Shown: in pieces, positions 471 to 61,890 of the stretch
How the letters are laid out: each line of letters opens with the position of its first letter
Position numbering within the stretch: the first letter of the stretch is position 1
NCBI RefSeq assembly: GCF_006345805.1
Contig: NC_042998.1
Coordinates: 49,538,001-49,602,000 of the forward strand
Origin: Octopus sinensis
Lineage: Eukaryota
Length of the DNA stretch: 64,000 nucleotides
Reading direction: 5' to 3'
The notes under the pieces: model-generated
The model's input: the letters and a program-made list of their open reading frames with translations, nothing else
Told to the model about the DNA's origin: nothing
Databases searched by the model: none
Program-made: the position numbers and the translations under genes

Positions 471-541
471 TAACAATACGTGTATTCCTTTTAAATGAAA
501 CAATGCATATTAACAAGTACCATGTGCAAGTAACTTTGAAG
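471..541 (+). CDS. TEP exon 1 in window (MG2): (V)[23 protein letters not shown]
   Basis: ttttttcag acceptor, gtaact donor; phase 1 to 0; joins DPSNT exon as in the MG2 pattern V.R.....V.I.DP. Confidence 0.8.
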
Positions 542-8271: not shown

Positions 8272-8324
<53 letters not shown>

Positions 8325-8364
8325 TATATATGTGTGTGTGTATATAAATATATATATATATGTG

Positions 8365-8407
<43 letters not shown>

Positions 8408-8537
8408 GATGCATACGCACAAGCATACACATGCATATATACATATTTATGTGCGCATGCATGAGTGTGTGTGTTTGTATGCATATATATATATATGCAC
8501 ATATATATATATATGCATATATATATATATACATATG

Positions 8538-8591
<54 letters not shown>

Positions 8592-21300: not shown

Positions 21301-21454
21301 AAAATAATATTTAATTACTGTTTAAACAAGCGTCTCCATTTCATCTTTCTTTCCCTTAACCCCATAGTGTTCAGATTATTCCGTCAAATGTAATACTTAT
21401 TAATTCATATTGTTTCAAACTAATCAAGCATTATCTTGTCACTTTGAGATTTTG

Positions 21455-21501
<47 letters not shown>

Positions 21502-21575
21502 TTAATATTCGTTGTCCAGAGAAAGATGGACATTAAAAAACGATGACAACAAAGGACTAACACCAATACCACCAC

Positions 21576-21645
<70 letters not shown>

Positions 21646-44900: not shown

Positions 44901-47900
44901 TCCTGTTGAATCAACGATCATTCATTCATTATTGTAATAATAGCATGAGAAAGCAAAATGCTTTCAATTCTCTCAGTATACAAGCAGCCCTCAATAAACT
45001 TTCTGTGATTAAAGTAGCCTGCAATGTAATTTAAGTTGGCCAAGCCTGGTCTTGGGCTTGTGTAATACAGTGATCCCTTGCTACTTCGCAGTTCAACTAT
45101 TGTGGATTCACGACTTCGCGGATTTAAAATATATATATATGAATACCTAAAATTTTTCATTGGTCTTTGAACGGAAAAAGAAGCAGTGGCAGCAACTTCC
45201 TATCACAATGTTTTTGCAGCCTCTCAAAAAAGAGCCAGTTCCTGCTGCTACTACTACGGTTGCACCTTCGGAAGAAGTGGAAGAGGTGTTCCAGGAAAGG
45301 GCACCGTCATCAGCTTCATCATCATCATTTCTACTGCACAGCAAATTCATCACCATCATCATTCAAATTTTACTTCAACTACTTTCGTGTTGAGTACAGT
45401 AAAAATCTTTATTTTTTAAATCTAAAGTGTTATTGCTTAACAGTCGCCCTTGTTATTAATAGACTACTGTAATGGGTGGGTTGCTAACAGAACAGGGAGG
45501 GTTTGAAAAGTCCAAATACACGTTAAATAAATAATGTAAATATGGTGTCCCTACTTCGCGGAAATTCAGTTATTGTGGCCGGTCTCGGAACCAATCTACT
45601 GCAATAAATGAGGGATCACTGTATGAGACTAAAAGTGTTCACACAAGGAAAACATCTACCCACAAAACTATGTGACAACAACAACAACAATGATGCAGGT
45701 GATAACGAAGACATGAACGAAAATGGTTACAATGACGGTTACAAATGCTGCCAACACCAATGAAAACACCACTGCTATGGCATTGATTTTGATGTCAGGA
45801 GTATTGGTGCTGTAATGACAATGATGTCTGCAACAAGAGTAGTTTAGATGTATTTGTATTTAGCATTTATCATATTCATTTTTTCAATCTTTTAGTGTTG
45901 AATATTTCAAATGAAATTCATTTACTACTGTTTTTTTTTCCTTTACAGAATTTCAAGCTTTCTATAATTGGGAATAGTGCCAAAAAGAAAAGAGATGCAA
46001 CAGTTTCAAAAGGAGATATGCTCAATTCTCATGCTTTTCCTTCTACCATTCCTAAGGAATCTAATTTTTGGGTATCTTATACATTTTAACTATTTAACTT
46101 ATCATAAAGGTTTTTAAATGTACATGTGCTCTTCTACTGCTGATTTACTTCCTAAATTACAATATTAACCCATTCACTTTTAAACCAGCCATATCCAGCT
46201 CAAATATTCTTCATATTTTATGTTAAAACTGGCCAGCTCCAACCTCTCACACCAAACCTACAATGTCATTTTGAAAATATACAAACACACCATTGAAATC
46301 TTGAAACTACAAGATAACGTGAGATTAATTCAAAACAAAGTGAATAAATACTGTAAATCCTCGATGATAATCCGCATTTTTTTCCCAAAATTTAAAAGTC
46401 AAAAGTCAAAAAAGTGTGTACTATATATGAGGTTAAAAATGAAAAATATTTTCTAAGCAATGTTCAAGTCTCTATTTGCTGTCTGGCTATGTTTATTCAG
46501 ATGCATTTTGTGATGTTGGGCACGAAAATACCTTAAGCTAAACCTGAAAGCAATGAAGTCATAAAAGAATCATCCATAAATTGCAGTAAGCAACATTTAT
46601 TAAAATAAAAGTATTCAGAACACAGAATAACATATAACAAAAACAATTTGCAAACATATTTACATTCCCATATAACAGTTAAGAACATCACCATTATTGT
46701 ATTACGCATGCGTGGAAGCATTTGTTCAACTAGGTGCTGCTAGCTTAATTATGCACGACTCAAGTTGGAGAAGGGGTGCATATTATACACAAGGTTTAGG
46801 TTTTTCAGAAATACAGCCCCCTAAAAATCCCCTGCGTATTATACTCAAGGGCGGACCTATACTCAAGGATTTACAGTTAGCAATACATTTGACAAAGAAA
46901 TTTGGATGCTAAAGGCTTAATAAATCTTTGGTATTCTAGGCTAAACTCTCTTGACCTACCATTCTTTCATACATATATATTACTTTCTAATCTTTTTGAC
47001 TTAGATTGTTGTATTTCTCTATGACTGTTTTCAGTGAAATTTTAAAATTTCTAGTTATATAAACTTGTTTCACTGAAAATTTTAAATGTACATTTAAAAT
47101 TGCATATTTACAACTGTTCTCATTCTTATTAAATGAAAAATGTAAATTCCAACAGAAATCTATTTTGAAAGTATTTATTTTGGAGATTTCATGGCTGTGT
47201 AGTAGGCTTGCTTCCCAACCACACGGTTAGGGGTTCAGTCCCACTGTATGGCACCTTGGGCAAGTGTCTTCTACTTTAGCCTCAGGATGACCAAAGCCTT
47301 GTGAGTGGATTTGGTAGACAGAAACTGAAAGAGGCCTGTCATATGTGTGTGCATGTGAGTGTGTGTGTGTATTTTGTGTTGGTTTTTTCCACCACCGCTT
47401 GACAACTGGTGTTCGTGTCTTTATGTCCCTGTAACTTATTGCTTGGCCACAGTCTAATGACTGAAACAAGTAAAAGATTTTAAAAAAATGGATGCTGATC
47501 ATAGTTTAATCAAGAGTGAGGTAAATGCAGTAAAAATAGTGGGGGTCAGTGGGACCCTATTTAAGTGGCCCTTCAGAAATTGAACCTCCTTACGATATTC
47601 CCTGGGAGTTCATGGTATGAAATTCATTGTCATTGCTCCAGTTTCATTGCCTATGCCATGCATTTAGTTTAAAATGCAGTAAAATTAGGGGAGTCAATGG
47701 GGCCCCAATTAGGCAGCTCTTAAAAAAATAGACACCCCTTAGGACATTCCCTGGGATTAGGGAAGTTGCTGGTTTCAGTTTCATTGTTCTTGCACCAACG
47801 GTCTAGGAGGAGTTAAAGAGCATAAAAACCTAACAGACAGAGAAACATCACTCAAATTTATATTACGATATATATATATATATATATATAATATATATAT

Positions 47901-48666: not shown

Positions 48667-51600
48667 ATGTATGTATATATTTGTGTGTGCATATATATGT
48701 ATGTATGTATACATTTGTGTATGTGTGTATATATATATATAGGGAGAGAGAGAGAGAGATGTAGATATGAAATTGTATGAAAGTTTGGGAAATTGTAATG
48801 TCCCAAACTTAGTACAGAAGATGTATTGTATATTCATATACAAGTTGAATGTTAGTTGAAAAAGGCTCAGCTTTTTTAATAAATTTATTTTTTTTAAAAT
48901 GTGACCATAAAAATTAATTCAAATTAAATTATATATTCATTTCATCATATAAAAAAAAAAAAAAAAGCCATACAATTCTTAAAACTTAAATTTCTTAAGA
49001 ATACTGGAATTAACTTTATTTCTGATCTATTATTCCATTCTGTTTGTATCTGCAGGCTGAGCCTTCCCCTATGTCTCGAAGTTTGCTCAATGGTAATGTT
49101 GCTGAAGACTGTAAGTCTAAATTTATATTTATATAGAAATCTAACCTTCATATATTGCTTCATTAGGTGGCAAGCTGGCAGAAACATTAGCACGCCAGGC
49201 GAAATGCTTAGCGGCATTTTGTCTGCCGTTATGTTCTGAGTTTAAATTTCGTCGAGGTCGACTTTGCCTTTCATCCTTTTGGGGTCGATAAATTAAGTAC
49301 CAGTTACGCACTGGGGTCGATGTAATCGTCTTAATACCTATGTCTGTCCTTGTTTGTCCCCTCTATGTTTAGCCCCTTGTGGGTAATAAAGAAATAGGTA
49401 TTTTGTCTGCCGTTACGTTCTGAGTTCAAATTTCACCGAGGTCGACTTTGCCTTTCATCCTTTTGGGGTCAATAAATTAAGTACCAGTTACTCACTGGGG
49501 TCGATGTAATCGACTTAATCCGTTTGTCTATCCTTGTTTGTCTCCTCTGTGTTTAGCCCCTTGTGGGTAGTAAAGAAATAATATATTGCTTCATTTGATG
49601 GTTTTTATTTGCTTTTTCCTGAAATATTTTCCAAGGTGTTTCAAGATGCTTTTATTATTTTTTTTTCTTTTTAAGAATTTCTTTTATTGTTTAGTCTGAA
49701 GAGAAAGCACTGCTCAGGAGATCCTTTAGAAGGCTCCTGAAGCTGGTAGGAGGGAAGGAGAAAAGTATCTTCGAAGTGGAGACTAGGTTTCAATGCTTGC
49801 AATAGAGTGGACTTCACTAAAAGCTCTGAAGGACTGGTGGTGGTGTTAAACTGGTCCTTGAGTGGCATTAATAGAGCCCATTTTGAAGCTTTTTTGCTAG
49901 GTCTCTGGTTCCAGGATATTTCTGACACCTTCCTTCCTCCCATTAATTTTTAGAAGCCATATAAAATATTTTGAGTATTGCCTGAATGTTATGTAAATTA
50001 AAATGTTACTAATTATTTGAATTAATATTTTAAATAATTTAAGGTGGTGAGCTGGTGGAATCGTTAGCACTCCAGGCAAAATGTTTAGCAGCATTTCGTC
50101 TGTCTTTACATTCTAGGTTCAAATTCTGCTGAGGTTGATTCTGCCTTTCATCCCTTTAGGATCAATAAAATAAGTACCAGTTGAGCACTGGGATTGATGT
50201 CATTGAATTTCTTCCCTTGAAATTGCTGGCCTTGAGTCAAAATTTGAAAGCGACATCTTAAATAATTTATATCAAGCATTTATGACTCCGTCAATTTTAT
50301 TTTTATCATTTTGTCTTCTTTTGTTTTCAGACTCGACGGATTCTTTATCTGGAATGTTTTATGATCTAACATTGAGGTAATGTCTATTTTCTAAAACTCT
50401 TTGTGAAAAATTGTTTTGAAGGGATATGCAGTTTTTTTTTTTTATTGGGATGTTCAATAATATGCAGGAGTGGCTGTGTGGTAAGTAGCTTGCTTACCAG
50501 CCACACGGTTCCTGGTTGAGTCCCACTGTGTGGCACTTTGGGCAAGTGTCTTCTACTATAGCCTTGAGCCAACCAAAGCCTTGTGAGTGGATTTGGTAGA
50601 CGGAAACTGAAAGAAGCCCGTCGAATATATATGTATATATATATATGTGTGTCTGTGTTTCCCCCCCCCAACATCGCTTGACAACCGCTAAGTAACGGGG
50701 ACGTAAACACACAAACATCGCTTGACAACCGATGTTGGTGTTTTTACGTCCCCGTTACTTAGCGGTTTGGCAAAAGAGACTGATAGAATAAGTACTAGGC
50801 TCGACTAAAAAGCGGTGCTCCAGCATGGCCGCAGTCAAATGACTGAAACAAGTAAAAGAGTAAAAGAGTAATGCAGTTATGATACTAATGAGAACCACAG
50901 ATGTCTTAGTTGATAGCTCAATGGTTCTCAACCATTTTCTGCCTATAGATCCCTTTGATTCCTATTTTACTCTACCAGACTCCCATAGCTATTCAATGTA
51001 TATAAAAACAATCCTACTGGATGGTTTCTGAGGAGAGGTGGCAATTTTATTACATTGACTCAGTACTTGAATTATTTTATCAACCACAAAAAGATGAAAG
51101 GTAAAGTCAACCTGGGCAGAATTTGTACTCAGAATCTAGGAAGTAAGACCAAATACCACAAGTCATTTTTCTGACATTGTAATAATTCTGCCAATCTGCT
51201 GCCATTATTTCTAAAATATTTCTTTCAAATTTTGGTACAAGGCCAGCAATTTTTAGTGAGGGGAAGGAGGAAGTCGGTTACATTAATCCCAGTACTTGAC
51301 TGTGGAGGCACATGGCTTAGTGGTTAGGGGTGTTGGACTCATGATCATAAGATTGTGGTTTCGATTCCTGGACCGTGCGACACATTGTGTTCTTGAGCAA
51401 AACACTTCATTTCACATTGCTCCAGTCTACTCAGCTGGCAAAAATGAGTAATCCTGCAACAGATTGATGTCCAGTCCAGTGGGGAATATATATGTTAGAG
51501 AAACTGGAAAACCGGCCCTATGAGTCTGTATAACACAGGAAGGACCTATCAGTATTTGACTAGTACTACATCAAAAAGATGAAAGGCAAAGTCAACCTCA

Positions 51601-52897
51601 ACAGAATTTGAACTCTAAGCATAATGGGTTGGTACAAATACCATAAAGTACTTTTCTAACACTTCTGACAATTCTGTTGGCTTGCTGACCTTACTCTGAG
51701 GCGACTCTTGTTATCGTTAGGCCTAACTCAGCATAAAACAAATATCACTATGAGTGCGCAATGATGCCATCAACAGGTAGGTCCTGAAACGACATGCATT
51801 CTGTCCTGATGACCCCATAAACTTGCTAACATCCTGTATGTGAAGCTTTCAACTGGTAACACTTGCAACTGCAAGTTGTTTGCAAAAAATCTGATTTATT
51901 TATTTTTTTTACTTGTTTCAGTCATGTGACTGTGGCCATGCTGGAGCACTACATTTAGTCGAGCAAATCAACCCCAGGACTTATTCTTTGTAAGCCTAGT
52001 ACTTATTCTATCAGTCTATTTTGCCGAACCGCTAAGTTATGGGGAGATAGACACACCAGCATCGGTTGTCAAGCGATGTTGGTGGGGACAAACACACAAA
52101 CATATACACACACATACACACATATATATATACGATTGACTTCTTTCAGTTTCCGTCTACTAAATCCACTCACAAGGCTTTGGTCGGCCCAAGGCTATAG
52201 TAGAAGACAGTTGCCCAAGGTGCCACACAGTGGGACTTGAACCCGGAACCATGTGGTTCGTAAGCAGGCTACTTACCACACAGCCACTCTTACGCCTATA
52301 GTAATAACATTTATATAATTTGTTCTAAAATCACACTCTATTCTTTTTTTATTTTTTGTCTTTCAACAGAAATGATGGTATACAGAAGATAAATTTCTCT
52401 TTACCAGATAATCTTACCACTTGGGAGATTCAAGGTTTCGGAATTATTGATAATTCACATTTCTGTGTGGCTGAATTAGTTGAAGTGAAAACTTTCAAAA
52501 GTTTTGTTGTCAAAATGAATTTCCCTAAAGTTATAAAGCAATTTAATTTTACAATGATTACGGTTCTTCTATATAACTATAAGAATACAGCTCTGCAAGT
52601 AAGTTCCAGCATTACATTTATAAGTTTTTCCATTCAGTTTCATCATCATCCCCATCATCAACATCATCGTCGTCATTGTCTTGTGATCGTATTCATCATC
52701 ATCATTGTCCTGCTCCTCCTCTTCATCATCATTATCGTCATTTTATCATCATTATTATTGCCAATACTGTCATCATCATCATCATCATCATGAAGTTATT
52801 ATCATCATTATTGTCCTTGCTGTCATCATCATCATCATCATCATCATATTCAATCACTTTGTCATCATCACCACTGTCATTATTACCATTGTCGTCG

Positions 52898-52933
<36 letters not shown>

Positions 52934-55900
52934 CCATCATCATCATCATGAAGTTATTATCATCATTATTGTCCTTGCTGTCATCATCATCCTCATCCTC
53001 ATCATATTCAATCACTTTGTAATCATCACCACTGTCATTATTACCATTGTCATCATCGTCATTATCATCCTCGTTGTTGTCGTCATCATCATCATTATCA
53101 TTTATTTCTGCTTCCCATGCCAGAATGAGTTGGTATGTATTAGACCATGTCAGTTCGTATTTATTTGGAGTTATTTGTGTATGTGTGTTATCGTGTTGTG
53201 TTCCGTGTGTGCTGAGTGTGTGATGTGTTTATGTGTGTATGTGTGTGTGTGTGCACATTAGTGTATACATTTGTGCACATGCATGTGTGTGGTTATGCAG
53301 ATGTTTACATTTTGTGCTTCTCATTTAAATTGCTGAGCTGTAGATGGTGACGTTTGCTGACATTTCTCAGTCAGCAAATCATTTAGTAGCTCTGTGCTTT
53401 CAAAGAGGAGTAAAAAAGAATTCCCTTACATGAAAAACAGGTATGGATCAGTAACAAGAAGGTTATCCAGCTATAAGACAATGCCTCAATAATATTTATT
53501 TGTTTAACTTTTGTTGTGGAGGTGTGTGACTTAGTGGTTAGGGTGTCGGCATCATGATTGTAAGGTTGTGGTTTCGTTTCCTGGACTGGGTGACACGTTG
53601 TGTTCTTGAGCAAAACACTTCATTTCACGTTACTCCAGTCCACTCAGCTGGCAAAAATGAGTAACACTGCAATGGATTGGTGTCCCTTCCAGCTGGGGAA
53701 CACGTACACCATTGAAACTGGGAAACCGGGCCCATGAGCCTGGCGAGGCTTTAAAAGGGTGTATTTATTTTTTTATTTTAAGTTTTGTTAGTATGGAAAA
53801 ATGGACCAGCTGTAAAACCCATGCCAAAACCCACCTTACCAGTACTGGTGCTACATAAAAAGTACTTAGTCCACATTGTAAGGTGGTTGGTGTTAGAAAG
53901 GGCATCCAGCCATAAAAACCATGTAAAAACAGACAGTGAGACCTGTCAAACCATCTAATCCAATGGTTCTCAACTATTTTTTTCCTGTGGACCCCATTGA
54001 TTTTTCTTTTACTTGGGTGGACTCCCATAACCATTTGTTATTTTAAAAAATCCCATATTTTTACATTTAAATATCGTTGGGAATCACATAAAAAGAATTT
54101 GTTAATATATTTTGTGTATAGTAAAAGTATAAGCAATATATTGTAGATAAATTTTAACTACAACATCTTATATGGACCCTGCAAGGGCCAATTAGACCCC
54201 AGTTGAGAACCACTGGTCCAATCTGTACCTGCATGAAAAATGGATGTTACATGGTGGTGGTGATGGTGGTGACGATGACGATGATATGTTTTGTTTTGTC
54301 TTACAAATTAAACCATTTTTATTTTCCTTTTTTGTTCCTAGGTACAAGTTACACTTCATGAATCAGCAGATGTTTGCTCATATGTCGATGGAAATGGACA
54401 TCATTATGAAACAAGTGTTAATATTGAAGCAAACGAGTCTAAATCTATCTTTTTTGTTATTCGGCCTCTTAATTTAGGAAAATTTCCCCTTAAGGTCTCT
54501 GCAAGAGATACTGGATCAAATTATATAGAAATCATTGAAGAAGAAATGTTTGTTCAAGCGAATACTCCAAAAGTAAATAATATATTAATTTGTCTTCTAT
54601 CTTTCACTTGTTTCAGTCATTAGATTGCACCTATGTTGGGATGTCTTGCAAACAACTTGCACATGCAAGTGCTACCAGTCAAAAACTCCTCATACCAGAA
54701 GCCAGTAAGTGTATGGGGTCATCAGGAGAGAATGTGTGCCGTTTCGGGGCCTACCTCTCGACGGCATCAATGCACACTGATATGAGGCCCCGCTTTCTAG
54801 ATCAGCTGGTTATCAAATAAATCTCAATATTCTTCTAGCCATTGCTCATCGTCTCTTTTTAACCAAATCCAGTGGCTAGCCTTCTCCACTGTAGTTTGGA
54901 TATCGGTCATGGTGGTATTGATTTTATGATGAGTTAGGCCTAACGATAACAACAGTCGTCTCACGCTGTGTCCAACAAGCCCTCTACATCCACTGCTTTG
55001 AAGGCTTTCGTCAAACAAATTGCCCTGAGAACTTATTTTTTTAAAGCCAGTTTCATCGATTTCTTTTGCTAAAGTGCTAAGTGACAGGGGTGTAAACAAA
55101 CTAACATTGGTTGTCAAGTGGTGGTGGTTGTGGTGGTGGGGACAAGCACAAACACAAGGGTACACACATACAGATATATGCACACACACATACACACACA
55201 CACATTTATATATATATGATGGGTTATTTCAGTTTCCATCTACCAAATCCACTCACAAGTCCTTGGTTGGCTTGGGATTATAGCAGAAGGCACTTTCCCA
55301 ATGTGCCATGAAGTGGACCTGAACCCAATCAGGGAATCAAACCCATGATCTAGCGATCAAGAATGCAACAGCCTAACCACTAGGCCACATGCCTTCTCTT
55401 TTTCTCCGTAATTTCCGCACTCACTTGATGGAGAAGGGATCAGGATGTTGCTGAGCTGTAGTTTATTATATGGTGCAAGCACACAGTGCATGTTGAGTGC
55501 CTCGACAGGCACCAACACAGCCGATGGGCAAATTTTAGTCGAGAACAGTGTTGGTTGGGGAGTTTGAGTGAGGCAGCATGCCTATCAAACAATTTTAAAA
55601 AGTACTGTGGATAAAAAATTTTCATTAAAATTTCTTGTTAATTCATGTACAAAACCAAGGTAGCAAACTGGCAGAATCATTAGCACACTCAGCAAAGTGC
55701 TTAGTAACGTTTTGTCCATCTTCACTTTCTGAGTTCAAATCCTACTGAAGTCAGCTTTGCCTTTCATTCTTTAGTGGGGGGGGGGGGGGGTCAATAAAAA
55801 AGTACAAGTTGAGTACTGGAGTGATGTAATTTACTTACTCTTCCTCTGAGGTTGTTGGCCTTGTGTACTTATTTTTTTAAAAGTCTAGCACTTATTCTAT

Positions 55901-56423: not shown

Positions 56424-58186
56424 TATATACGACGGGCTTCTTTCAGTTTCCGTCTACCAAATCCACCCACAAGGCTTTGTTGGCCCGAGGCTATAGTAGA
56501 AGACACTTGCCCAAGGTGCCATACAGTAGGACTGAACCTGGAACTATGTGGTTGGTAAGCAAGCTACTTACCACACAGCCACTCCTACACCTGTTGAATA
56601 TTCTTACTTTCATTTAAAAATTTTTTGTAAATATTTAAAGTGCACGATTTTTTGATAATGAAATAGTATTTGTATTTTTGTTTTGATTTGTTTAACAGTC
56701 TGAAAAAAAAGAAAATAAAACCTCGACCAACAATAACCTTCCGGTTGAGAAAGTTCCAGATAATGAAATATCAGTTAAAAATCGTATGTAGAAAATTGGA
56801 TTCAATCAAAACTCTATTACACTTACGTTTGATTTTTATTTTCATATTTTAAAATTTTGCATTAATTTTTAAATGTACCATATATTCTACCATACAAGTC
56901 CATGTAATACATAGTGTAAATAAGGCTGCGAGCTGGCAGAATTGTTAGCACACAGGACAAAATGCTGCCAAGCATTTGGCCATTCTTTTATTCTTTCATT
57001 CTTTTACTTGTTTCAGTTATTTGATTGCAGCCATGCTGGAGCACTGCCATGAAGGGTTTTAGTAGAACAAATTAAACCCAGGGCTTATTTCTTAAGCCTA
57101 GTACTTATTTTATTGGTGTCCTTTGCTGAACACACCAACACCAGTTGTTAAGTGGTGATGGGGAAGGGGACAAGCACAGACAGAAAGACACATACGCACA
57201 CATACACACATATATATGACAGGCTTCTTTCAGTTTCCATCTACCAAATCTACTCTCAAGCCTCGAGACTTGCCCAAGGTGCCATGCGGTGGGACTGATC
57301 CCAGGACCATGTGGTTAGGAAGCAAGCTTCTTACCACATTGCCATACCTGCACCATCTTTATATTCTGAGTCGAAATGCTGTTGACGTCAATTTTGCTTT
57401 CCATCAACTTAGCCCCTTCTCCAAAACTGTTGGCCTTGTGCCAGAAATTTGAAACCAATATATTGTGTAAACATGCAGTGTAAATATTCAAACATTGTCA
57501 CTATTTTTCCAAATTCTGCTACATTTCACATGGAATTTTTGGTCCTCCAAAGTTGTCTTGGTGTATAAATTGGTCTACCTGTTTTGGTCCGTAAATTTTA
57601 GCCTAAAAACTTTGACTTGTATGCCTGGAAAATATGATATAAAAATTTCATGACAAATATTTTTCAAATTAGATATTAAAAAAACTTATATTATAGTTAT
57701 CTCATTTCATCATCATCATCATCACCATTGCTTTTAAGGTCCACTTTTCCATCATCATCATCATCATCATCATCATCGTTTAATGTCCGTTTTCCGCGCT
57801 AGCACGGGTTGGACGGTTTCGACCGGGGTCTGGGGAGCTCGGGACTGCCCCAGGCTCCAATCTAGTCTGGCAGTGTTTCTACAGCTGGATGCCCTTCCTA
57901 ACGCCAACCACTCCGCGAGTGTAGTGGGTGTTTTTTACGTGCCACCTGCACAGGTGCCAGAGAGGTCTGGCATCGGCCACGCTTATTCAAATCAGATTGA
58001 GGTAGATTTTCTATGGCTGGATACCCATCCTGTCACCAACCTTCACCTGTTTCCTAGCAAAGAAGTATTTCTCCATGGTTAGACATATTCTCATAGAAAA
58101 ATAGAAATGAACAACACCTCTGTTATGGAGGGGATATTCCTTTACAGCCATCACATGGCAATGAGAAACAAACACACACACATTTC

Positions 58187-58226
<40 letters not shown>

Positions 58227-58882
58227 CATGCATGCATGCATATATGCCTGCACACACACACACACACATACACACACAAACAAACAAACAAACAACACAT
58301 TTTCATTCAGATATACTTTACTTGAAATAATGCATAATTCATTTACATTCTGACATTGAATTTGAAACCGTTAATTTTTCCTTTTCTTTTTTATTGCACT
58401 AGGTTATTTATTTAGCAGTATTGTGAAAACTGCTTTGACTGAACCTGGAAAATTGATACGCATGTCTTATGGATCTGGAGAACAAAATATTATTTACATG
58501 GCATTAACAATTTATGCTCTAAAATATCTCAGGAATACTATCCAGATGGATGAGAAAGTGTATGAGAATGGGAAAGAATTCATAAGAATGGGTAAAGTTA
58601 ATTTTAAACTCAATCTATGTTCTTAATTATCCGACATATATAATACAAAATTCTATATCTGTAACATAATTTGCCTTCATTTATAATGGCTATTTGGATT
58701 AATTGCATTTATAGGCGTAGGAGTGGCTGTGTAGTAAGTAGCTTGCTTACGAACCACATGGTTCCAGGTTCAGTCCCATTGCGTGGCACCTTGGGCAAGT
58801 GTCTCCTACTATAGCCTCGGGCTGACCAAAGTCTTGAGAGTAGATTTGGTAGATGGAAACCGAAAGAAGCCCATCGTATATA

Positions 58883-58941
<59 letters not shown>

Positions 58942-61890
58942 GTGTGTATATATTTGTGTGTCTGTGTTTGTCCCCCCCAACATTGCTTGACAACCGATGC
59001 TGGTATGTTTACGTCCCTGCAACTTACTGGCTCGGCAAAAGAGACCAATAGAATAAATACTAAGCTTATAACGATTAAGTCCTGGGGTCAATTTGCTCGA
59101 CTAAAGGTGGTGCTCCAGCATGGCCACAGTCAAATGACTGAATCAAGTAAATGAGTAAGTTAAGTATGTTAGTTGCTGTTGTTAAACCCTTGTCAGACCT
59201 ATAAACAAAAGCAACCTAAATTTCACAATTTTATCCTTTTAACCCTTTTGATACCAACCTGCCTGAAACTGCCCAGGGTCTGATAAAACTGTTGTAATTT
59301 AGATTACTATTTTAACCCTTTCGTTACCAACCCGGGTGAAACTGGCTCTGGTTCTGAGTACAAATGTCTTGTCTTCAAAAGTTTTTAATTAAAATCTTCC
59401 ACCAAACCTTAGTCACAATTTATATTCCTGACACTAGCTGAATGATAACTAAGTTATTTTACTAAATTCTTTGCTATATTTAAAGTATTAGAAAAAAAAC
59501 TTAGAGCATCTCAAAATAAATACAGTAACGAAAGGGTTAAGGTATCTAAATTAAAACTTTCCTTAAAAATTTCATGTGAGTCTATGATCCAATCACCTGC
59601 TTAATAATAACACAGCTATTTCACTAAATTCTTAATTGTTTACGAAAATAATTGTAACAAAAGCTATGTATTTCAACAGAAATATAATAACAAAAAAGGG
59701 TACTGCCTCAAAGAGTTATAGACAAACCAATGAATTCTGGGACTTATTTTTAAAGCTTGGTGCTTATTTCATTGGTCTATTTAGTCAAACTGCTATGTTA
59801 CAGGGATGTAAACAAAGGAACACTGGTTGTCAAGCAAGGGGGTAGGGAAAGCCATTATAAAAATCTACTTTGTTATAAAAATCTACACACACATACATGC
59901 ACATGCACATACCTATGTGTGCATGTGTATATAAAGAAGCAAACACCAGATGGATAGTGGTTCGCTCACTACAACCGTTTCAGATATGTTTTTATATTGA
60001 TGTTATTACATCATGTGAAAAATAACCCATTTACATCAGGTAAAGAAATGCAAAAATTAAACATTTAAAAAAAAATATCCCACAAATCCAAGCATGTGTA
60101 ATTTCATGACTCTCTGGTGAACTTTGGTTACCTGACGAAAATGTTTTTTTTTTTTGCACTTTTATTCATCAATAAAAATCATGCCTGAAACAGCTGTAGT
60201 GAGTGAACCACTATCCAACTGTTGTTATTTGTTTATTATTCACCTTACTCGGAATCAGTAATTAGCGTGAATCTGGAGTCTATTGAGTGCAGTACAACTG
60301 GGACAGTGTTTGTACCTAGGTGCAGCCTTGAGATTTGTGGTGTATTCAGTTGGATGTTTGTGATTGTACATGCAACTTGAATATAAATCTGTCTTTACTT
60401 TGGTATGCACGTATATGTTTCTCTAATGTTGTTTTGTACATGATAGTGATCTTATTGACCTGTCGTTAATGCTTTACTATTTAAGGGGCTGATTCATTTG
60501 AATAATAATAATAATAATAATAATGAAATTATTGTATACAGTGCTCAGGTGCACCACAACTTATCAAAAGTGCATATAAAGCATATGCAGTAATGTACAA
60601 ATGTCTGGGAAGTGAACAGTGTATGAGTCAGATACATGCTTGCGTGAATATGGAGGAGAGAAAATCAGGTGTAGTGTTGGCGAATTTCAGGAAGCATGGA
60701 AGTTTTGAATGATACAGTGCTTCGACAACTAATAACTGATGCTGGCAGTTTGTTCCATACTTCAGCAACTCTTAGCATGAAAAAATGTTTCTGAAAGTCA
60801 TGGGAGCTGTGCTGTTTTCTGACTTTGTAAACATGTCCACAGGTGTTAGACAGGTGGAGTTTGAAAAGGTGCTCACAGTTATTGTTAGTAAGATGGTTAA
60901 TAATTTTATGGGTGTCTGCTGCCAGACATCGGAGTTTCAATGTATCCATGCCCAGGGAAGCAAGGCGTTCAGAATATGGCAAATGCCTGATGGAGGGTAT
61001 TCTCTTGGTTGCATGTTGCTGAATGGTTTCCAGATGATTAATATCATGGGCAAGATAGGGGTTCCAGACCGGTGATGCAAATTCCAGGTGAGGCTGCACC
61101 ATAGCTATATAAAGCCTCAACTTTAATACACACACACACACATGCGCATTCAACAGGCTTCTGCATAGTCTCCATCTATCAAATTCACTCACAAGGCATT
61201 AGTTGGACAGGGACTATTGTAGAAGACACTTCCCCAAGATGCCATATCTTAAGCTATTGACTTACATTAAACAGATTGGTGGTAGAAAGACTAGTAAAAC
61301 ATAATAGAATTACCTTGTTTTGGATGAGATTTAGTAGATAGAACAGAAATTCTCTTCAGGAAAAACTTGAACTGATGATAACCTTTAACAACCACCCCAT
61401 GTGTTTTTGTTGCGAGTGAGTTGGTTGGATTATTTAGACTGTAAATGAGAGAGGAAAATGTCAAGCTAAAATCTGCCGTAGTTTAACTATGAATAAGTAA
61501 CTATTAAGTCTATGCGTTCATTCTCATTTCCTTCATCCCAGAATTTGAAGTTATTATGAAAAGTTTAGGAAGTGTTACTCATAGGAGCTTTGAAGGATCG
61601 TATAGCTCATACAATCAAATACTTGTTGAATTTATTTAATTACTTTCTTTAGCGTATGGGAAAAGAAAGTTAGAAAACTAAACTGAAGAGTCAGTAAGCA
61701 AAAAGTTGTGGTTGGATTTTTTGGTAAGGCGATAATCAAACATTAAAAACACTGTCAAAAAGCAGTCACAGACTGAATTTACTCAAAAGACTTTTTTTAT
61801 TTTTTATTTTTCAGGTATTGAAAAACAAATGACTTTTAGAAAAAATGATGGTTCTTTTTCAACTTTTGAGAATACAGAATCAAGCACATG
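471..61890 (+). CDS. Multi-exon thioester-protein superfamily gene (TEP/A2M/C3-like), partial: MG2 to start of TED, thioester motif degenerate (GSGEQ)
   Basis: 19 GT-AG exons join in frame with matching phases. Family motifs occur in the expected order: DP...FGLWTV (MG2), FMVQEYIVPKF (MG2/MG3), [14 protein letters not shown]...MIP...YY (MG5), [12 protein letters not shown] (MG6b), [13 protein letters not shown] (MG7), [18 protein letters not shown]...STW (TED). No database search was run; subfamily is unresolved. Confidence 0.95.
2095..2377. repeat. Foldback, about 135-bp inverted arms with about 14-nt spacer
   Basis: ORFs 2103+ and 2232- encode near-identical peptides; arms align by eye. 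Confidence 0.9.
2541..2678 (+). CDS. TEP exon 2 (MG2): [46 protein letters not shown]
   Basis: ttttcag / gtaaat; 138 nt, phase 0-0; L...AP.G.W motif of MG2. Confidence 0.9.
5427..5730 (+). mobile_element. SINE family D (tRNA-like head; central CTGGCGTCCCATCCAGG...GAAACCGG segment); other copies about 9500-9780 (-), 14030-14330 (-), 51300-51545 (+), 53515-53760 (+)
   Basis: A/B-box-like head GGCCTAGTGATTAGAGC...GGTTTGAATC; reverse-complement match to 14030-14330. Confidence 0.7.
10312..10877 (+). mobile_element. Internally deleted mariner element (566 bp), copy 1
   Basis: TA-flanked TIRs TTGGGTTGTC...GACAACCCAA; transposase N-terminus [11 protein letters not shown] fused to C-terminus with YSPDIAPSD. 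Confidence 0.92.
11353..11395 (+). CDS. TEP exon 3 (micro-exon): [14 protein letters not shown](I)
   Basis: ttttgttttag / gtaagt; 43 nt, phase 0-1; completes the F.V.EY(V)LPKF motif with the next exon. Confidence 0.88.
12226..12632 (-). mobile_element. SINE family B, dimeric copy (period about 184 bp); a monomer follows at about 12915-13135
   Basis: Tandem body repeat; reverse complement of the 49165-49580 family. Confidence 0.8.
14452..14539 (+). CDS. TEP exon 4 (MG3): [28 protein letters not shown](R)
   Basis: ctttaag / gtaagt; 88 nt, phase 1-2; PKF.I.I...P motif. Confidence 0.9.
15183..15261 (+). CDS. TEP exon 5 (MG3): [26 protein letters not shown]
   Basis: atttcag / gtaaaa; 79 nt, phase 2-0; matches the Y.YGKPV.G motif. 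Confidence 0.9.
15598..15870 (-). mobile_element. Family C non-autonomous retroelement with (GAT)n tail; near-identical copy at 57755-57980, others at 16555-16890, 19290-19680, 44075-44520
   Basis: (CAT)n-CGTTTAACGTCC...CTGGATGCCCTTCCTAACGCCAACCAC shared by all copies. Confidence 0.75.
17661..18117 (+). mobile_element. RTE-like LINE insertion, 5'-truncated with inverted 5' segment, 13-bp TSD
   Basis: 17661-17820 encodes RT motif [20 protein letters not shown] on minus; 17822-18117 encodes the C-terminus ([11 protein letters not shown]...LLW) plus (ATG)n tail on plus; TGCTATATAAGCA at 17648-17660 and 18118-18130. Confidence 0.85.
18734..19180 (+). mobile_element. Tc1/mariner-superfamily remnant (transposase C-terminus)
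   Basis: ORF 18766-19098 has WP..S.DL..CDYFLWG.LK..VY...P.TLDDLK; possible termini TACAGGGT / ACCCAGTA. Confidence 0.75.
19820..20330 (-). mobile_element. Decayed LINE endonuclease fragment (RTE-like)
   Basis: Minus strand gives broken VSVNSPT..KDKFY and ILNTF segments resembling APE endonuclease; frameshifted. Confidence 0.45.
21101..21271 (+). CDS. TEP exon 6 (MG3): [57 protein letters not shown]
   Basis: ttattaaag / gtaagt; 171 nt, phase 0-0; non-repetitive open frame with MG3-like G...F and V.V.E..T. Confidence 0.85.
23170..23277 (+). CDS. TEP exon 7 (MG4-like): [36 protein letters not shown]
   Basis: tatttttag / gtaagt; 108 nt, phase 0-0; open and non-repetitive, weak motif similarity. 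Confidence 0.7.
24627..25192 (+). mobile_element. Internally deleted mariner element (566 bp), copy 2
   Basis: Same TIRs, TA flanks, length and deletion junction as copy 1; [12 protein letters not shown]. Confidence 0.92.
25366..25431 (+). CDS. TEP exon 8 (MG5 start): [22 protein letters not shown]
   Basis: ttttgtacag / gtaaga; 66 nt, phase 0-0; VG...YY joins IISKG. Confidence 0.85.
29142..29327 (+). CDS. TEP exon 9 (MG5): IISKGKILL...[35 protein letters not shown]
   Basis: tttttgcag / gtaaaa; 186 nt, phase 0-0; S.G.I...M.P...LVYY motif. Confidence 0.93.
32760..33045 (+). mobile_element. Decayed RTE-like LINE 3' fragment
   Basis: KIRQQ.LR, LWN and [21 protein letters not shown] resemble the C-terminus of the 17.8-18.1 kb RTE piece. 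Confidence 0.55.
35529..37176. repeat. Near-perfect inverted duplication (35529-36050 / 36635-37176), 584-bp spacer
   Basis: Identical peptide MAETAVRCS... on opposite strands; only a few substitutions and (TA)n length differ. Confidence 0.92.
37261..38332. repeat. Direct tandem duplication, period 536 bp
   Basis: 37261-37796 repeated at 37797-38332, apparently identical, bounded by (TA)n. Confidence 0.92.
38346..39500 (+). mobile_element. CR1/L2-like LINE ORF2 fragment: endonuclease plus linker, frameshifted
   Basis: [51 protein letters not shown]. Confidence 0.88.
39921..40173. repeat. Near-perfect 253-bp palindrome
   Basis: ATAGAATGGTTGTATACTGTC...GACAGTATACAACCATTCTAT with a short central loop; mirror ORFs on both strands. 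Confidence 0.92.
40933..41076 (+). CDS. TEP exon 10 (MG6a/LNK): [48 protein letters not shown]
   Basis: ttttttcag / gtaagt; 144 nt, phase 0-0; Y.P....V.L..MDK matches PG...V.L.AVD.S. Confidence 0.9.
42506..42553 (+). CDS. TEP exon 11 (micro-exon, LNK): [16 protein letters not shown]
   Basis: catttctag / gtaagt; 48 nt, phase 0-0; placed by splice signals and position only. Confidence 0.65.
45068..45621 (+). mobile_element. Tigger/pogo-like non-autonomous DNA transposon
   Basis: TA|CAGTGATCCCT...AGGGATCACTG|TA; internal KKKQ..Q..IT.F resembles a Tigger C-terminus. Confidence 0.8.
45949..46071 (+). CDS. TEP exon 12 (LNK end / variable region): [41 protein letters not shown]
   Basis: strong ttttttcctttacag acceptor; donor gtatct is weak so the 3' end is uncertain; phase 0-0; contains KKKR. 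Confidence 0.65.
46351..46876. mobile_element. pogo/Tigger-type MITE
   Basis: TIRs CTGTAAATCCTCGA / TCAAGGATTTACAG; left TA flank, right flank imperfect. Confidence 0.65.
49056..49110 (+). CDS. TEP exon 13 (variable region): [18 protein letters not shown](Y)
   Basis: tttgtatctgcag / gtaagt; 55 nt; only the phase 0-1 frame is compatible with the next exon. Confidence 0.7.
49165..49580 (+). mobile_element. SINE family B, dimeric copy with 15-bp TSD
   Basis: tRNA-like head GGTGGCAAGCTGGCAGAAAC.TTAGC; body repeated twice; ATATATTGCTTCATT at 49150-49164 and 49581-49595. Confidence 0.85.
50331..50376 (+). CDS. TEP exon 14 (micro-exon): [14 protein letters not shown](R)
   Basis: ttgttttcag / gtaatg; 46 nt, phase 1-2; occupies the position of the YFPESW motif, which is degenerate here. 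Confidence 0.75.
51698..51890 (+). repeat. Unclassified interspersed repeat, copy 1 (hammerhead-core-like motifs)
   Basis: Reverse-complement homology to 54641-54963. Confidence 0.8.
52370..52598 (+). CDS. TEP exon 15 (MG6b/MG7): [54 protein letters not shown]...[10 protein letters not shown]
   Basis: tttcaacag / gtaagt; 229 nt, phase 2-0; LPD.LTTW, .CVA, F.V....P and L.NY motifs. Confidence 0.96.
52605..53105. repeat. (CAT)n low-complexity tract containing a 158-bp tandem duplication
   Basis: TGAAGTTATTATCATCATTATTGTCCTTGCTGTC at 52791 and 52949. Confidence 0.8.
53961..54215. mobile_element. hAT (Charlie-type) MITE
   Basis: TIRs CAATGGTTCTCAAC / GTTGAGAACCACTG; 8-bp flanks ATCTAATC / GTCCAATC (6 of 8 match). 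Confidence 0.7.
54342..54572 (+). CDS. TEP exon 16 (MG7): [77 protein letters not shown]
   Basis: ttgttcctag / gtaaat; 231 nt, phase 0-0; not in the ORF track (no Met start); V.V.L...CS and F.I.PL.LG...V.A motifs. Confidence 0.93.
54641..54963 (-). repeat. Unclassified interspersed repeat, copy 2 (about 130 bp longer internally)
   Basis: Shares GAGTTAGGCCTAACGATAACAA and GGGGTCATCAGG...GTTTC.GG.CCTAC with the reverse complement of copy 1. Confidence 0.8.
56699..56783 (+). CDS. TEP exon 17 (short CUB N-segment): [28 protein letters not shown](R)
   Basis: ttgtttaacag / gtatgt; 85 nt, phase 0-1, bridges exons 16 and 18 exactly; LP...VP motif. Confidence 0.8.
58403..58591 (+). CDS. TEP exon 18 (TED start, thioester region): [62 protein letters not shown](G)
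   Basis: ttattgcactag / gtaaag; 189 nt, phase 1-1; LI.M.YG[S]GEQN and KYL..T.Q motifs. Confidence 0.96.
59316..59536. mobile_element. piggyBac-type MITE (221 bp), nested in an older TTAA-type element
   Basis: TTAA|CCCTTTCGTTAC...GTAACGAAAGGG|TTAA. Confidence 0.85.
59947..60221. mobile_element. MITE-like element with about 40-bp TIRs
   Basis: CAGATGGATAGTGGTTCGCTCACTAC vs GTAGTGAGTGAACCACTATCCAACTG; no clear TSD. Confidence 0.6.
60501..61126 (-). mobile_element. CR1-like LINE 3' end with (ATT)n tail
   Basis: [34 protein letters not shown], followed by (ATT)n. Confidence 0.9.
61815..61890 (+). CDS. TEP exon 19 (TED): [24 protein letters not shown](W)
   Basis: ttatttttcag / gtaacg; 76 nt, phase 1-2; Q..FR..DGSFS.F...STW motif. 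Confidence 0.95.

What the first reader, a model, noticed from the sequence alone, without database searches (positions are those of the whole stretch)
58459..58488. Thioester-dead TEP: GCGEQ is GSGEQ in an otherwise intact gene
Seen: codons 58471-58485 are GGA TCT GGA GAA CAA; TCT (Ser, 58474-58476) is one base from TGT (Cys). The upstream Pro is also Ser (MSYG vs MPYG). All 19 exons are open with good splice sites, so it does not look like a pseudogene. Established: the Cys-Gln thioester gives C3, C4, A2M and TEPs covalent attachment; C5, Drosophila Mcr/Tep6 and ovostatin lack it and act non-covalently. Inference: an independently derived, non-covalent cephalopod TEP, such as a recognition, cage, junction or egg/mucus protein. 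The catalytic His position lies beyond the window.
Basis: partly seen in the sequence, partly recalled or inferred. Interest (0 to 1): 0.8.

Follow-up and report, generated by a model that had tools for sequence, protein, structure and literature searches.

The report
Octopod C3 paralogue without a thioester
The window holds most of an intact octopod gene, a duplicate of complement C3 whose thioester cysteine is a serine, so it cannot bind targets covalently; the same serine is kept in another octopod, and similar thioester-less C3 duplicates are already known in snails and clams.

Summary
Window 58471-58485 reads GGA TCT GGA GAA CAA (G-S-G-E-Q), preceded by M-S-Y. I rebuilt the same 19-exon open model independently, with canonical AG/GT at every junction.

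The Ser is neither an error nor a recent lesion. The closest relative is Argonauta hians 'CD109 antigen-like' (56% amino-acid identity). It has the same exon structure, the same S-Y-G-S-G-E-Q and the same TCT codon.

Synonymous sites between the two species are saturated (pS 0.77). Non-synonymous difference is 0.27 overall and only 0.07 in the TED segment around the dead site, so the gene is under purifying selection.

It is not a CD109, Mcr or generic TEP. In trees it is sister to the canonical cephalopod C3 clade (196/200). The Argonauta copy carries a C345C-like tail and both copies keep a polybasic processing site.

Relative to C3 it lacks the thioester Cys, the anaphylatoxin domain, the MG4 domain and half of CUB. 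The catalytic His is Tyr in Argonauta.

Thioester-less C3-like duplicates are already described in gastropods, bivalves and arthropods. I found no cephalopod case in the searchable literature. The finding is real but of moderate interest, and the function remains inferred.

The parts
471..541 (+). Exon 1 in the window (MG2, first part; starts with 2 bases of a split codon; the gene continues upstream of the window)
   Evidence: splice sites, open frame. Counterpart in Argonauta at L001 3686-3756, same length of 71 nt.
2541..2678 (+). Exon 2 (MG2: [10 protein letters not shown]...[15 protein letters not shown])
   Evidence: Argonauta L001 4434-4571, same 138 nt. tblastn to Argonauta C3.
11353..11395 (+). 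Exon 3 (end of MG2: [14 protein letters not shown])
   Evidence: Argonauta L001 8055-8097, same 43 nt.
14452..14539 (+). Exon 4 (start of MG3: [13 protein letters not shown]...)
   Evidence: Pfam MG3 1.8e-10. Argonauta L001 9939-10026, same 88 nt.
15183..15261 (+). Exon 5 (MG3)
21101..21271 (+). Exon 6 (MG3, ends ...DPKYK)
   Evidence: Argonauta exon is the same 171 nt.
23170..23277 (+). Exon 7 (short junction where MG4 would lie, plus the start of MG5)
   Evidence: No MG4 hit in Pfam. 81-aa deficit against Argonauta C3.
25366..25431 (+). Exon 8 (MG5: [22 protein letters not shown]), missing from the Argonauta annotation but present in its genome
   Evidence: Open counterpart at L001 13048-13113, same 66 nt. 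Adding this exon makes the Pfam A2M_BRD match nearly full length.
29142..29327 (+). Exon 9 (MG5)
   Evidence: The Argonauta exon is the same 186 nt.
40933..41076 (+). Exon 10 (MG6, first part)
42506..42553 (+). Exon 11 ([16 protein letters not shown])
   Evidence: The Argonauta exon is the same 48 nt.
45949..46071 (+). Exon 12 (linker). The polybasic K-K-K-R codons are at 45982-45993, the likely beta/alpha processing site. There is no Cys, so no anaphylatoxin domain.
   Evidence: Argonauta has LPRKRRN at the aligned place. Argonauta C3 has RTKR followed by a 6-Cys ANA domain.
49056..49110 (+). Exon 13 (linker)
50331..50376 (+). Exon 14 (linker, ...[12 protein letters not shown])
   Evidence: The Argonauta exon is the same 46 nt.
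52370..52598 (+). Exon 15 (A2M domain, MG6b/MG7: [14 protein letters not shown]...LLYNY)
   Evidence: Pfam A2M 6e-20.
54342..54572 (+). Exon 16 (MG7)
56699..56783 (+). Exon 17 (short, low-complexity stand-in for the N-terminal half of CUB)
   Evidence: About 33-40 aa shorter than Argonauta C3. Fast-evolving, pN 0.50.
58403..58591 (+). Exon 18 (start of TED). It holds S-Y-G-S-G-E-Q at 58465-58485, with the Ser that replaces the thioester Cys at 58474-58476.
   Evidence: The Argonauta exon is the same 189 nt, 83% identical in protein, with TCT at the same codon.
61815..61890 (+). Exon 19 (TED: [24 protein letters not shown]). It ends in a split codon, and the gene continues beyond the window.

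Best explanation
The window carries exons for residues from MG2 to the start of TED of a functional, selectively maintained octopod paralogue of complement C3. It arose by duplication in the cephalopod lineage.

Shown:
- The Cys of the thioester motif is Ser, in two octopods and with the same codon, so the beta-cysteinyl-gamma-glutamyl thioester cannot form.
- The residue that would direct thioester reactivity is Tyr rather than His in the Argonauta copy.
- The anaphylatoxin domain, MG4 and half of CUB are missing.
- A polybasic site and, in the orthologue, MG8 and a C345C-like tail are retained.
- The TED segment around the dead site is the most conserved part of the protein.

Inferred:
- The protein is secreted and cut at the polybasic site into two chains.
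- It releases no anaphylatoxin and is not activated by a convertase in the C3 manner.
- It acts by non-covalent binding. TED would serve as a conserved binding or packing module, and C345C as a docking site for a partner such as a factor B-like protease.
- It would therefore work as a recognition or regulatory component, or a C3b/CVF-like scaffold, beside the canonical thioester-bearing C3 that octopods also have.
For: Sequence and gene model.

Orthologue in another octopod:
- An exhaustive profile search found GAB1607438.1 from Argonauta hians as the only close relative (E=7.5e-83), with [12 protein letters not shown].
- Its locus L001 has matching exon lengths and phases, and TCT TAT GGT TCT GGA GAA CAG at the site.

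Selection:
- 721 aligned codons give 56% amino-acid identity, pS 0.77 (saturated) and pN 0.27.
- The TED segment has pN 0.07, against 0.47-0.50 in the linker and the CUB stub.

C3 affinity:
- NJ bootstrap with Argonauta C3 is 98/100.
- The N-terminal and C-terminal partitions both agree, at 39/40 and 33/40.
- With four canonical cephalopod C3s, the paralogue is sister to their clade at 196/200, and the four exclude it at 200/200.
- An HMM of C3 tails hits the Argonauta orthologue at E=1.3e-15 and hits no CD109, iTEP or A2M-type protein checked. BLASTP to the tails of Argonauta C3 and a Lymnaea NTR-domain protein gives 9e-6 and 5e-8. Pfam NTR gives E=0.003.

Losses:
- There is no Pfam MG4 hit, although Argonauta C3 has one.
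- Against Argonauta C3 the deficit is 81 aa at MG4 and 63 aa at ANA.
- The Argonauta intron at the MG4 position is only 166 bp.
- The linker has no Cys, whereas Argonauta C3 has a 6-Cys ANA domain.
- The catalytic position is VVYKEMMG against C3's PVIHKEMMG.

Precedent: PMC8960428 and PMC7016707.
Against: - There is no transcript or protein evidence for this gene in the window's species.
- The 5' end (MG1, signal peptide) and the 3' two-fifths (rest of TED, CUB, MG8, C345C) lie outside the window, so intactness there rests on the Argonauta copy only.
- Only one other species could be compared, and dS is saturated, so no formal dN/dS or site test was possible.
- The trees are neighbour-joining on a long branch. 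Placement at the base of the cephalopod C3 clade could be partly long-branch attraction.
- The C345C assignment falls below Pfam's own cut-off (17.8 against 21.9 bits).
- No partner, tissue or ligand is known, so the non-covalent scaffold or recognition role is inference from architecture.
- The complete conservation of G-S-G-E-Q-N, including the Gln, is not explained by a merely dead site.
Confidence: 0.8

Rival explanations
1. The thioester-less copy is not a cephalopod-specific duplicate. It would belong to an older molluscan thioester-less C3-like lineage, shared with gastropod BgC3-1/BgC3-3 ('C3-like type I') or with the bivalve 'C5-like' proteins.
For: Gastropod type I C3-like proteins have also lost the ANATO domain and the thioester (PMC8960428; PMC7016707). 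BgC3-1 and BgC3-3 were not in my trees. The long branch could hide deeper affinities.
Against: The pair groups with the canonical cephalopod C3s at 196/200 and 98/100, and in both halves of the protein. The bivalve C5-like proteins (Sinonovacula, Mercenaria) group with bivalve C3 instead, and their motif is degenerate (GCVSQ, GSFET) rather than GSGEQ. The gastropod type I proteins lost the alpha-beta site, which this gene keeps.
Confidence: 0.1
2. The site is still chemically active. Ser and Gln would form an intramolecular oxo-ester, or another reactive arrangement, so the protein would keep a slower or different covalent chemistry.
For: [17 protein letters not shown] is identical in the two octopods although synonymous sites are saturated, and this is the most conserved stretch of the protein. 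The Gln is retained, unlike in the bivalve C5-like proteins. Ser with Gln kept recurs in 8 of the 122 aligned family sequences (these 8 include this gene, its Argonauta orthologue and three entries of one BgTEP3 cluster). From my own knowledge, untested here, Thr-Gln ester cross-links exist in bacterial adhesins.
Against: There is no direct evidence. The catalytic His is replaced by Tyr in Argonauta. Cys to Ser is a single-base, near-isosteric change, so its recurrence is expected by chance. From memory, untested here, a Cys-to-Ser variant of human alpha-2-macroglobulin does not form an ester and takes up the transformed conformation. Conservation can equally reflect packing of this buried helix start in TED.
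Confidence: 0.05
3. It is an artefact or a dying gene: a sequencing error at base 58475, or a recently disabled pseudogene.
For: TCT is one base from TGT. No transcript data are available. Several canonical domains are missing.
Against: Argonauta hians has the identical TCT codon and also the upstream Ser. All 19 exons are open with conserved lengths and phases in both species. pN is 0.27 overall and 0.07 at TED against a saturated pS, which is incompatible with neutral decay since the two lineages split.
Confidence: 0.03
4. It is simply the orthologue of a known thioester-less or non-complement clade: insect-type Mcr/Tep6, or CD109 as the Argonauta record's name suggests.
For: The database name of the nearest relative is 'CD109 antigen-like'. 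The best solved-structure match by sequence is human CD109, at 3.9e-37, marginally ahead of CVF, C4 and C5.
Against: The trees place it with C3, away from the CD109 and iTEP sequences. The orthologue has a C345C-like tail that the CD109, iTEP and A2M-type proteins checked lack. There is no LDLa domain in the Pfam scan of the orthologue. The squid CD109 described in the literature has GCGEQ and a catalytic His (PMC4361686).
Confidence: 0.02

Closest known systems
Canonical cephalopod complement C3 (Argonauta hians GAB1607029.1, Octopus vulgaris C3; Es-C3 of Euprymna scolopes in the literature)
   Same: It is the sister group in the trees, at about 30-34% identity over MG2-MG3, MG5-MG6 and MG7-TED. 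Both have a polybasic beta/alpha site at the same place, a TED, and in the orthologue MG8 and a C345C-like tail.
   Different: Canonical C3 has KPYGCGEQTMI, a catalytic His (PVIHKEMMG), a 6-Cys anaphylatoxin domain, MG4, a full CUB and a second RxRR site. This gene has Ser for Cys, Ser for Pro and, in Argonauta, Tyr for His. It lacks ANA and MG4 and has a shortened CUB. It also evolves about twice as fast: distance 0.66 between the two copies, against 0.28 between Argonauta and O. vulgaris C3.
Thioester-less C3-like duplicates of other molluscs (Biomphalaria BgC3-1 and BgC3-3, gastropod 'C3-like type I', bivalve 'C5-like' of Sinonovacula and Mercenaria)
   Same: These are also lineage-specific C3 duplicates that lost the thioester and, in gastropods, the ANATO domain, while a canonical C3 persists beside them (PMC8960428, PMC7016707). 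They are the same kind of thing.
   Different: The duplication appears separate, because the bivalve copies group with bivalve C3. Gastropod type I lost the alpha-beta site, whereas this gene keeps a polybasic site. The bivalve motifs are degenerate (GCVSQ, GSFET), whereas here G-S-G-E-Q-N is fully kept. Loss of MG4 is not mentioned for those proteins in the passages I read.
Vertebrate complement C5
   Same: It is a C3-family member with C345C that has no thioester and acts non-covalently (established knowledge; PMC8960428 draws the same analogy).
   Different: C5 arose by a vertebrate duplication, keeps the anaphylatoxin domain (C5a) and all eight MG domains, and is cleaved by a convertase. 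This gene has no ANA and no MG4. By sequence it is no closer to C5 (5e-30) than to C4, CVF or CD109.
BgTEP3, tsetse TEP2 and chicken ovostatin (Cys replaced, Gln kept in the first two)
   Same: These share the identical single change of Cys to Ser with GEQ retained (PMC7016707; P0151 reads PTGSGEQ).
   Different: They are iTEP/CD109- or A2M-type proteins without a C345C tail and lie in a different clade. The resemblance is convergent.
Cobra venom factor
   Same: It is a C3 paralogue that works without ANA and without covalent attachment, using C345C to hold factor B (established knowledge). It is among the best solved-structure matches, at 7.6e-32.
   Different: CVF is a snake-lineage duplicate that loses ANA and most of TED by processing. 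Here TED is retained and is the most conserved part. No link to octopus venom or to factor B binding has been tested.

Membership tests
A2M/TEP superfamily | Macroglobulin (MG) domains, A2M domain and bait-region domain | tested here: met
   Pfam on the spliced 724-aa protein gives A2M 6e-20, A2M_BRD 1.2e-15, MG3 1.8e-10 and a weak MG2 at 4.6e-4.
A2M/TEP superfamily | Thioester-containing domain (TED) | tested here: met
   TED_complement scores 1.9e-18 on the 87 residues in the window, and 1.3e-62 at full length in the Argonauta orthologue.
A2M/TEP superfamily | Intact CGEQ thioester motif | tested here: not met
   The motif is G-S-G-E-Q in the window and in Argonauta. Of 122 aligned relatives, 104 have both Cys and Gln.
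Complement C3/C4/C5 subfamily | C-terminal C345C/NTR domain | tested here: inconclusive
   This part is outside the window. In the Argonauta orthologue an HMM of C3 tails gives E=1.3e-15. BLASTP to C3 and NTR-protein tails gives 9e-6 and 5e-8. Pfam NTR gives only 17.8 bits against a cut-off of 21.9.
Complement C3/C4/C5 subfamily | Phylogenetic placement with C3-family proteins | tested here: met
   It is sister to the canonical cephalopod C3s at 98/100 and 196/200, and in both halves of the protein. These are NJ trees only.
Complement C3/C4/C5 subfamily | Polybasic beta/alpha processing site between MG6a and MG6b | tested here: met
   The window has SAKKKRD (45982-45993), Argonauta has LPRKRRN, and Argonauta C3 has RTKR at the equivalent place. 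Cleavage itself was not tested.
Complement C3/C4/C5 subfamily | Anaphylatoxin (ANATO) domain with six Cys | tested here: not met
   The linker has no Cys and is 63 aa shorter than in Argonauta C3, which has the CC...C...C...CC pattern.
Complement C3/C4/C5 subfamily | Eight MG domains, including MG4 | tested here: not met
   There is no Pfam MG4 hit, whereas Argonauta C3 scores 1.5e-19. The deficit is 81 aa. No candidate exon lies in the window intron, and the Argonauta intron there is 166 bp.
Complement C3/C4/C5 subfamily | Catalytic His about 110 residues after the thioester (C3/C4B type) | tested here: not met
   The position is outside the window. It is Tyr in the Argonauta orthologue (VVYKEMMG against PVIHKEMMG in C3).
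Macroglobulin complement-related (Mcr/Tep6) | LDLa domain insertion and C-terminal transmembrane segment, with a mutated thioester | tested here: not met
   No LDLa domain appears in the Pfam scans of the window protein or the orthologue. The trees place it with C3. A transmembrane segment was not tested separately.
CD109 | CD109/iTEP clade membership, no C345C tail, GPI anchor, GCGEQ with His | tested here: not met
   It groups away from Lingula, Ruditapes and Polypterus CD109. The orthologue has a C3-type tail. Squid CD109 has GCGEQ and His (PMC4361686). A GPI signal was not tested.
Molluscan thioester-less C3-like duplicates | A C3-family duplicate with a non-conserved thioester, co-existing with a canonical C3 | tested here: met
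   Argonauta has both this gene and a canonical C3. The kind is described in PMC8960428 and PMC7016707. Common descent with the gastropod and bivalve examples is not supported by the tree.

The most novel reading that the evidence does not exclude
The motif may not be dead. The invariant S-Y-G-S-G-E-Q-N context, the most conserved stretch of the protein across two octopods with saturated synonymous divergence, could be kept because Ser and Gln form an oxo-ester or an otherwise reactive pair. That would be an 'ester-containing protein' variant of the TEP warhead, with different stability or target preference. The same reading might then apply to the other recurrent GSGEQ proteins (BgTEP3, tsetse TEP2, fish A2M-like proteins, P0073).
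Probability: 0.05. Interest if true: 0.85.

Novelty: new variant of a known kind. Interest (0 to 1): 0.38.

Why it matters
Cephalopod complement is known essentially from one canonical C3. This finding shows that octopods also keep a second, much-remodelled C3 under purifying selection. That copy has no thioester, no anaphylatoxin domain and no MG4, yet it has a strongly conserved TED.

It adds a cephalopod case to the repeated, independent evolution of non-covalent C3 paralogues: C5 in vertebrates, and C3-like duplicates in gastropods, bivalves and arthropods.

It also offers a natural experiment on what TED is for when it cannot attach covalently, and on whether a C3-family protein can work with seven MG domains.

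It corrects a database name as well. The Argonauta record is called 'CD109 antigen-like', is truncated at its 5' end and lacks one exon.

This is useful comparative immunology rather than a new principle.

Tried and rejected
- A word-indexed homologue search with the thioester exon alone found nothing.
- A Pfam scan of concatenated open stretches from the first 33 kb detected only one exon (A2M_BRD). Split, divergent MG exons are invisible to that approach.
- I considered a tempting '[13 protein letters not shown]' stretch at 55.4 kb as the V-PEG exon. I rejected it for lack of a compatible acceptor or phase, and because its GC-rich composition looks like a repeat.
- Weak tblastn pile-ups at 27.2-27.8 kb, 12.7 kb and 46.2 kb contain stops or sit in repeats, and are noise.
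- I searched for hidden MG4 exons in introns 6 and 7. None were found.
- An apparent duplicate of exon 1 at 330-380 comes down to an 11-nt identity and is probably chance.
- Formal dN/dS is not computable because pS is 0.75 or higher. I report pN against pS instead.
I did not pursue it by other means.
- Pfam gave no family for three intronic ORFs that look transposon-like by eye.
- Literature searches for a cephalopod thioester-less C3 found none.

Full report
**Observation.**
The bases are as described. Window 58462-58485 reads ATG TCT TAT GGA TCT GGA GAA CAA, which is M-S-Y-G-S-G-E-Q. The codon at the thioester-Cys position is TCT (58474-58476), one base from TGT. The usual Pro two residues upstream is also TCT/Ser (58465-58467). 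The Gln is kept. The surrounding exon (...[34 protein letters not shown]...) is a typical TEP thioester region.

**Gene model.**
The tools are not built for spliced genes, so I rebuilt the model by hand.
- I first worked out the 3' exons from reading frames, splice sites and phase continuity.
- I then used those exons to fetch relatives.
- I used the relatives in tblastn to locate further exons.
- I filled the remaining phase gaps with a constrained splice-site search.

The result is 19 exons on the + strand, from 471 to 61890. Every exon has an AG acceptor behind a pyrimidine tract and a GT donor, mostly GTAAGT-like. The phases are consistent, and the open reading frame gives a partial protein of 724 aa. 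The model has no start and no stop. The gene enters the window in MG2 and leaves it 63 residues after the Ser. I saw no further exon between 61.9 and 64 kb, so the catalytic-His position is indeed outside the window. Pfam on the spliced protein finds MG2 (weak), MG3, A2M_BRD, A2M and the start of TED_complement.

**The Ser is old and conserved.**
An exhaustive profile search of 1.8 billion representative proteins gave one close relative, P0001 (E=7.5e-83). All other hits were at 35% identity or less. P0001 is GAB1607438.1, 'CD109 antigen-like', from the octopod Argonauta hians, and it reads [12 protein letters not shown].

I fetched its locus (L001) and mapped its coding exons exactly. I also found open, spliceable counterparts of window exons 1-4 and 8 that the Argonauta annotation had missed. 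Most exon pairs have identical lengths (71, 138, 43, 88, 171, 66, 186, 48, 46, 189, 76 nt), so these are orthologues or very close co-orthologues.

At the site Argonauta has TCT TAT GGT TCT GGA GAA CAG, which gives the same two Ser codons. A sequencing error or a private mutation is therefore excluded.

**Selection.**
Over 721 aligned codons the two proteins are 56% identical. Synonymous sites are saturated (pS 0.77, about the random expectation), while pN is 0.27. A gene decaying neutrally since the split would have pN close to pS.
- The 87-codon TED segment in the window is the most constrained part, with pN 0.07. In the thioester exon alone pN is 0.084 against pS 0.87.
- The linker and the stub that replaces the first half of CUB are the least constrained, with pN 0.47-0.50.
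- The 17 residues [17 protein letters not shown] are identical in the two species.
- A formal dN/dS cannot be given because dS is saturated.

**What family it belongs to.**
The database name CD109 is misleading. By sequence alone, vertebrate CD109, CVF, C4, C5, TEP1 and C3 are all about equally distant (3.9e-37 to 3e-28). Three lines of evidence point to complement C3.
- *Closest non-orthologous relative.* This is Argonauta's own canonical C3 (P0002, E=1.3e-43). In a neighbour-joining tree of 122 family members, the window protein and its Argonauta orthologue join that C3 in 98 of 100 bootstraps. The N-terminal and C-terminal halves analysed separately agree, at 39/40 and 33/40. I then added O. 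vulgaris C3 and two unnamed transcript-assembly C3s that are 55-56% identical to Argonauta C3. The four canonical cephalopod C3s form a clade that excludes the pair (200/200), and the pair is sister to that clade (196/200). The neighbours beyond are mollusc C3 and 'C5-like' proteins, horseshoe-crab C3 and Lingula 'venom factor'.
- *C-terminal tail.* The Argonauta orthologue has about 150 Cys-containing residues after MG8. An HMM built from C3 tails, without this protein, hits it at E=1.3e-15. The same HMM hits none of the CD109, iTEP or A2M-type proteins I checked. BLASTP aligns the tail to those of Argonauta C3 and of a Lymnaea 'NTR domain-containing protein' (9e-6 and 5e-8). Pfam NTR/C345C is the only Pfam hit, but it is below threshold (E=0.003).
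- *Processing site.* Both octopod copies have a polybasic site (window SAKKKRD, Argonauta LPRKRRN) where C3 has its beta/alpha processing site (RTKR in Argonauta C3).

**What else is missing.**
Compared with Argonauta C3 the protein lacks several elements.
- *MG4.* There is no Pfam MG4 hit, while C3 scores 1.5e-19. The deficit between MG3 and MG5 is 81 aa. No candidate exon lies in the window intron, and the corresponding Argonauta intron is only 166 bp.
- *Anaphylatoxin domain.* The deficit is 63 aa and the linker has no Cys, whereas C3 has the CC...C...C...CC pattern.
- *First half of CUB.* About 35 residues are missing, replaced by a fast-evolving low-complexity stretch. This stretch also lacks the second RxRR site found in canonical cephalopod C3s.
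- *Catalytic His.* In the Argonauta copy the residue aligned with the catalytic His is Tyr.

**How it most likely works.**
Shown: no thioester can form. The gene is maintained by selection. TED is its most conserved part. A polybasic site is kept, and in the orthologue MG8 and the C345C-like tail are kept too. Octopods also have a canonical C3.

Inferred: the protein is a secreted, two-chain C3-like protein that neither releases an anaphylatoxin nor deposits covalently. It would act by non-covalent binding, with TED as a conserved binding or packing module and C345C as a docking surface. Because it lacks ANA from the outset, it may sit permanently in a C3b-like or CVF-like state and serve as a scaffold or decoy for a factor B-like protease. 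Alternatively it may be a soluble recognition or regulatory molecule.

I put 0.8 on 'functional, thioester-incapable C3 paralogue' and much less on any particular role.

**Comparison with what is known.**
Loss of the thioester is common in the family. In my 122-sequence alignment 18 sequences lack Cys and/or Gln, and 8 have Ser with Gln kept.

[quoted passage not shown] It also states that gastropod type I C3-like proteins lost the alpha-beta site, the ANATO domain and the thioester. That paper does not mention cephalopods.

PMC7016707 reports the same for Biomphalaria BgC3-1 and BgC3-3. It also reports a Cys-to-Ser change with Gln preserved in BgTEP3, tsetse TEP2 and, in a looser sense, ovostatin.

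The squid TEPs described so far are C3, A2M, two TEPs and CD109. CD109 is explicitly reported with GCGEQ and His (PMC4361686). My searches found no description of a thioester-less cephalopod C3.

The octopod gene is therefore a further, apparently independent, instance of a known kind. Its distinguishing features are a retained processing site, a fully retained G-S-G-E-Q-N, and loss of MG4 and part of CUB.

**Limits.**
- There are no expression data.
- Only two species could be compared.
- The trees are NJ only and the branch is long.
- The ends of the gene in this species were not seen.
- The C345C call is below Pfam's cut-off.
- The species of the window is not identified. It is an octopod-like genome that is not A. 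hians itself.

**Verdict.**
In novelty it is a new variant of a known kind, of moderate interest.

Noticed in passing
L001 3686-3756, 4434-4571, 8055-8097, 9939-10026, 13048-13113: The Argonauta hians record GAB1607438.1 ('CD109 antigen-like') is truncated at its 5' end and skips one internal exon. Open, spliceable counterparts of window exons 1-4 and 8 lie upstream of and inside the annotated gene. The first of them is assigned to a separate 83-aa gene call. The name CD109 is also not supported.
   Followed up: yes
window 21272-25365 (exon 6 to exon 8 region); L001 11750-11915: Both octopod copies lack the MG4 domain. The deficit is 81 aa against Argonauta C3, there is no Pfam MG4 hit, and the Argonauta intron at that position is 166 bp. 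The anaphylatoxin domain and about half of CUB are also missing. A C3-family protein with seven MG domains is unusual.
   Followed up: partly
protein P0073 (Logan transcript assembly, contig 4.5 kb, no name): An unrelated CD109/iTEP-type protein of 1449 aa, without a C345C tail, carries the same double substitution S-Y-G-S-G-E-Q. Only 4 of 122 aligned relatives have Ser at the Pro column. Its organism is unknown.
   Followed up: partly
proteins P0056 (Sinonovacula 'C5-like') and P0016 (Mercenaria 'C5-like'): The bivalve C3 duplicates have degenerate motifs (PSGCVSQ, PIGSFET) and group with bivalve C3 rather than with the octopod gene. These appear to be separate losses of the thioester.
   Followed up: partly
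window, whole length (for example 8150-8790, 52600-53260): About half of the window matches other parts of the same window. The repeats are many copies of a short SINE-like element (translating as ...[20 protein letters not shown]...) plus long TA/TG/CA microsatellites. Introns range from 0.6 to 11.6 kb.
   Followed up: partly
window about 38.3-39.7 kb (+ strand); 60665-61192 (- strand): Retrotransposon debris lies in introns. An ORF near 38.7 kb matches Pfam Exo_endo_phos_2 (endonuclease-reverse transcriptase, 4e-6). A 175-aa minus-strand ORF between exons 18 and 19 looks like the end of a LINE reverse transcriptase by eye, but gave no Pfam hit.
   Followed up: partly
window 10505-10801 and 18757-19095 (+ strand): Two intronic ORFs resemble the C-terminal part of mariner/Tc1 transposases by eye ([14 protein letters not shown]...). 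Pfam found nothing at E<0.01, so this remains a lead only.
   Followed up: partly
window 330-380 versus 510-541: An upstream stretch translating YKIQVTLNN resembles the end of exon 1 (YHVQVTLK). At the DNA level only 11 bases are identical, so this is probably chance.
   Followed up: yes
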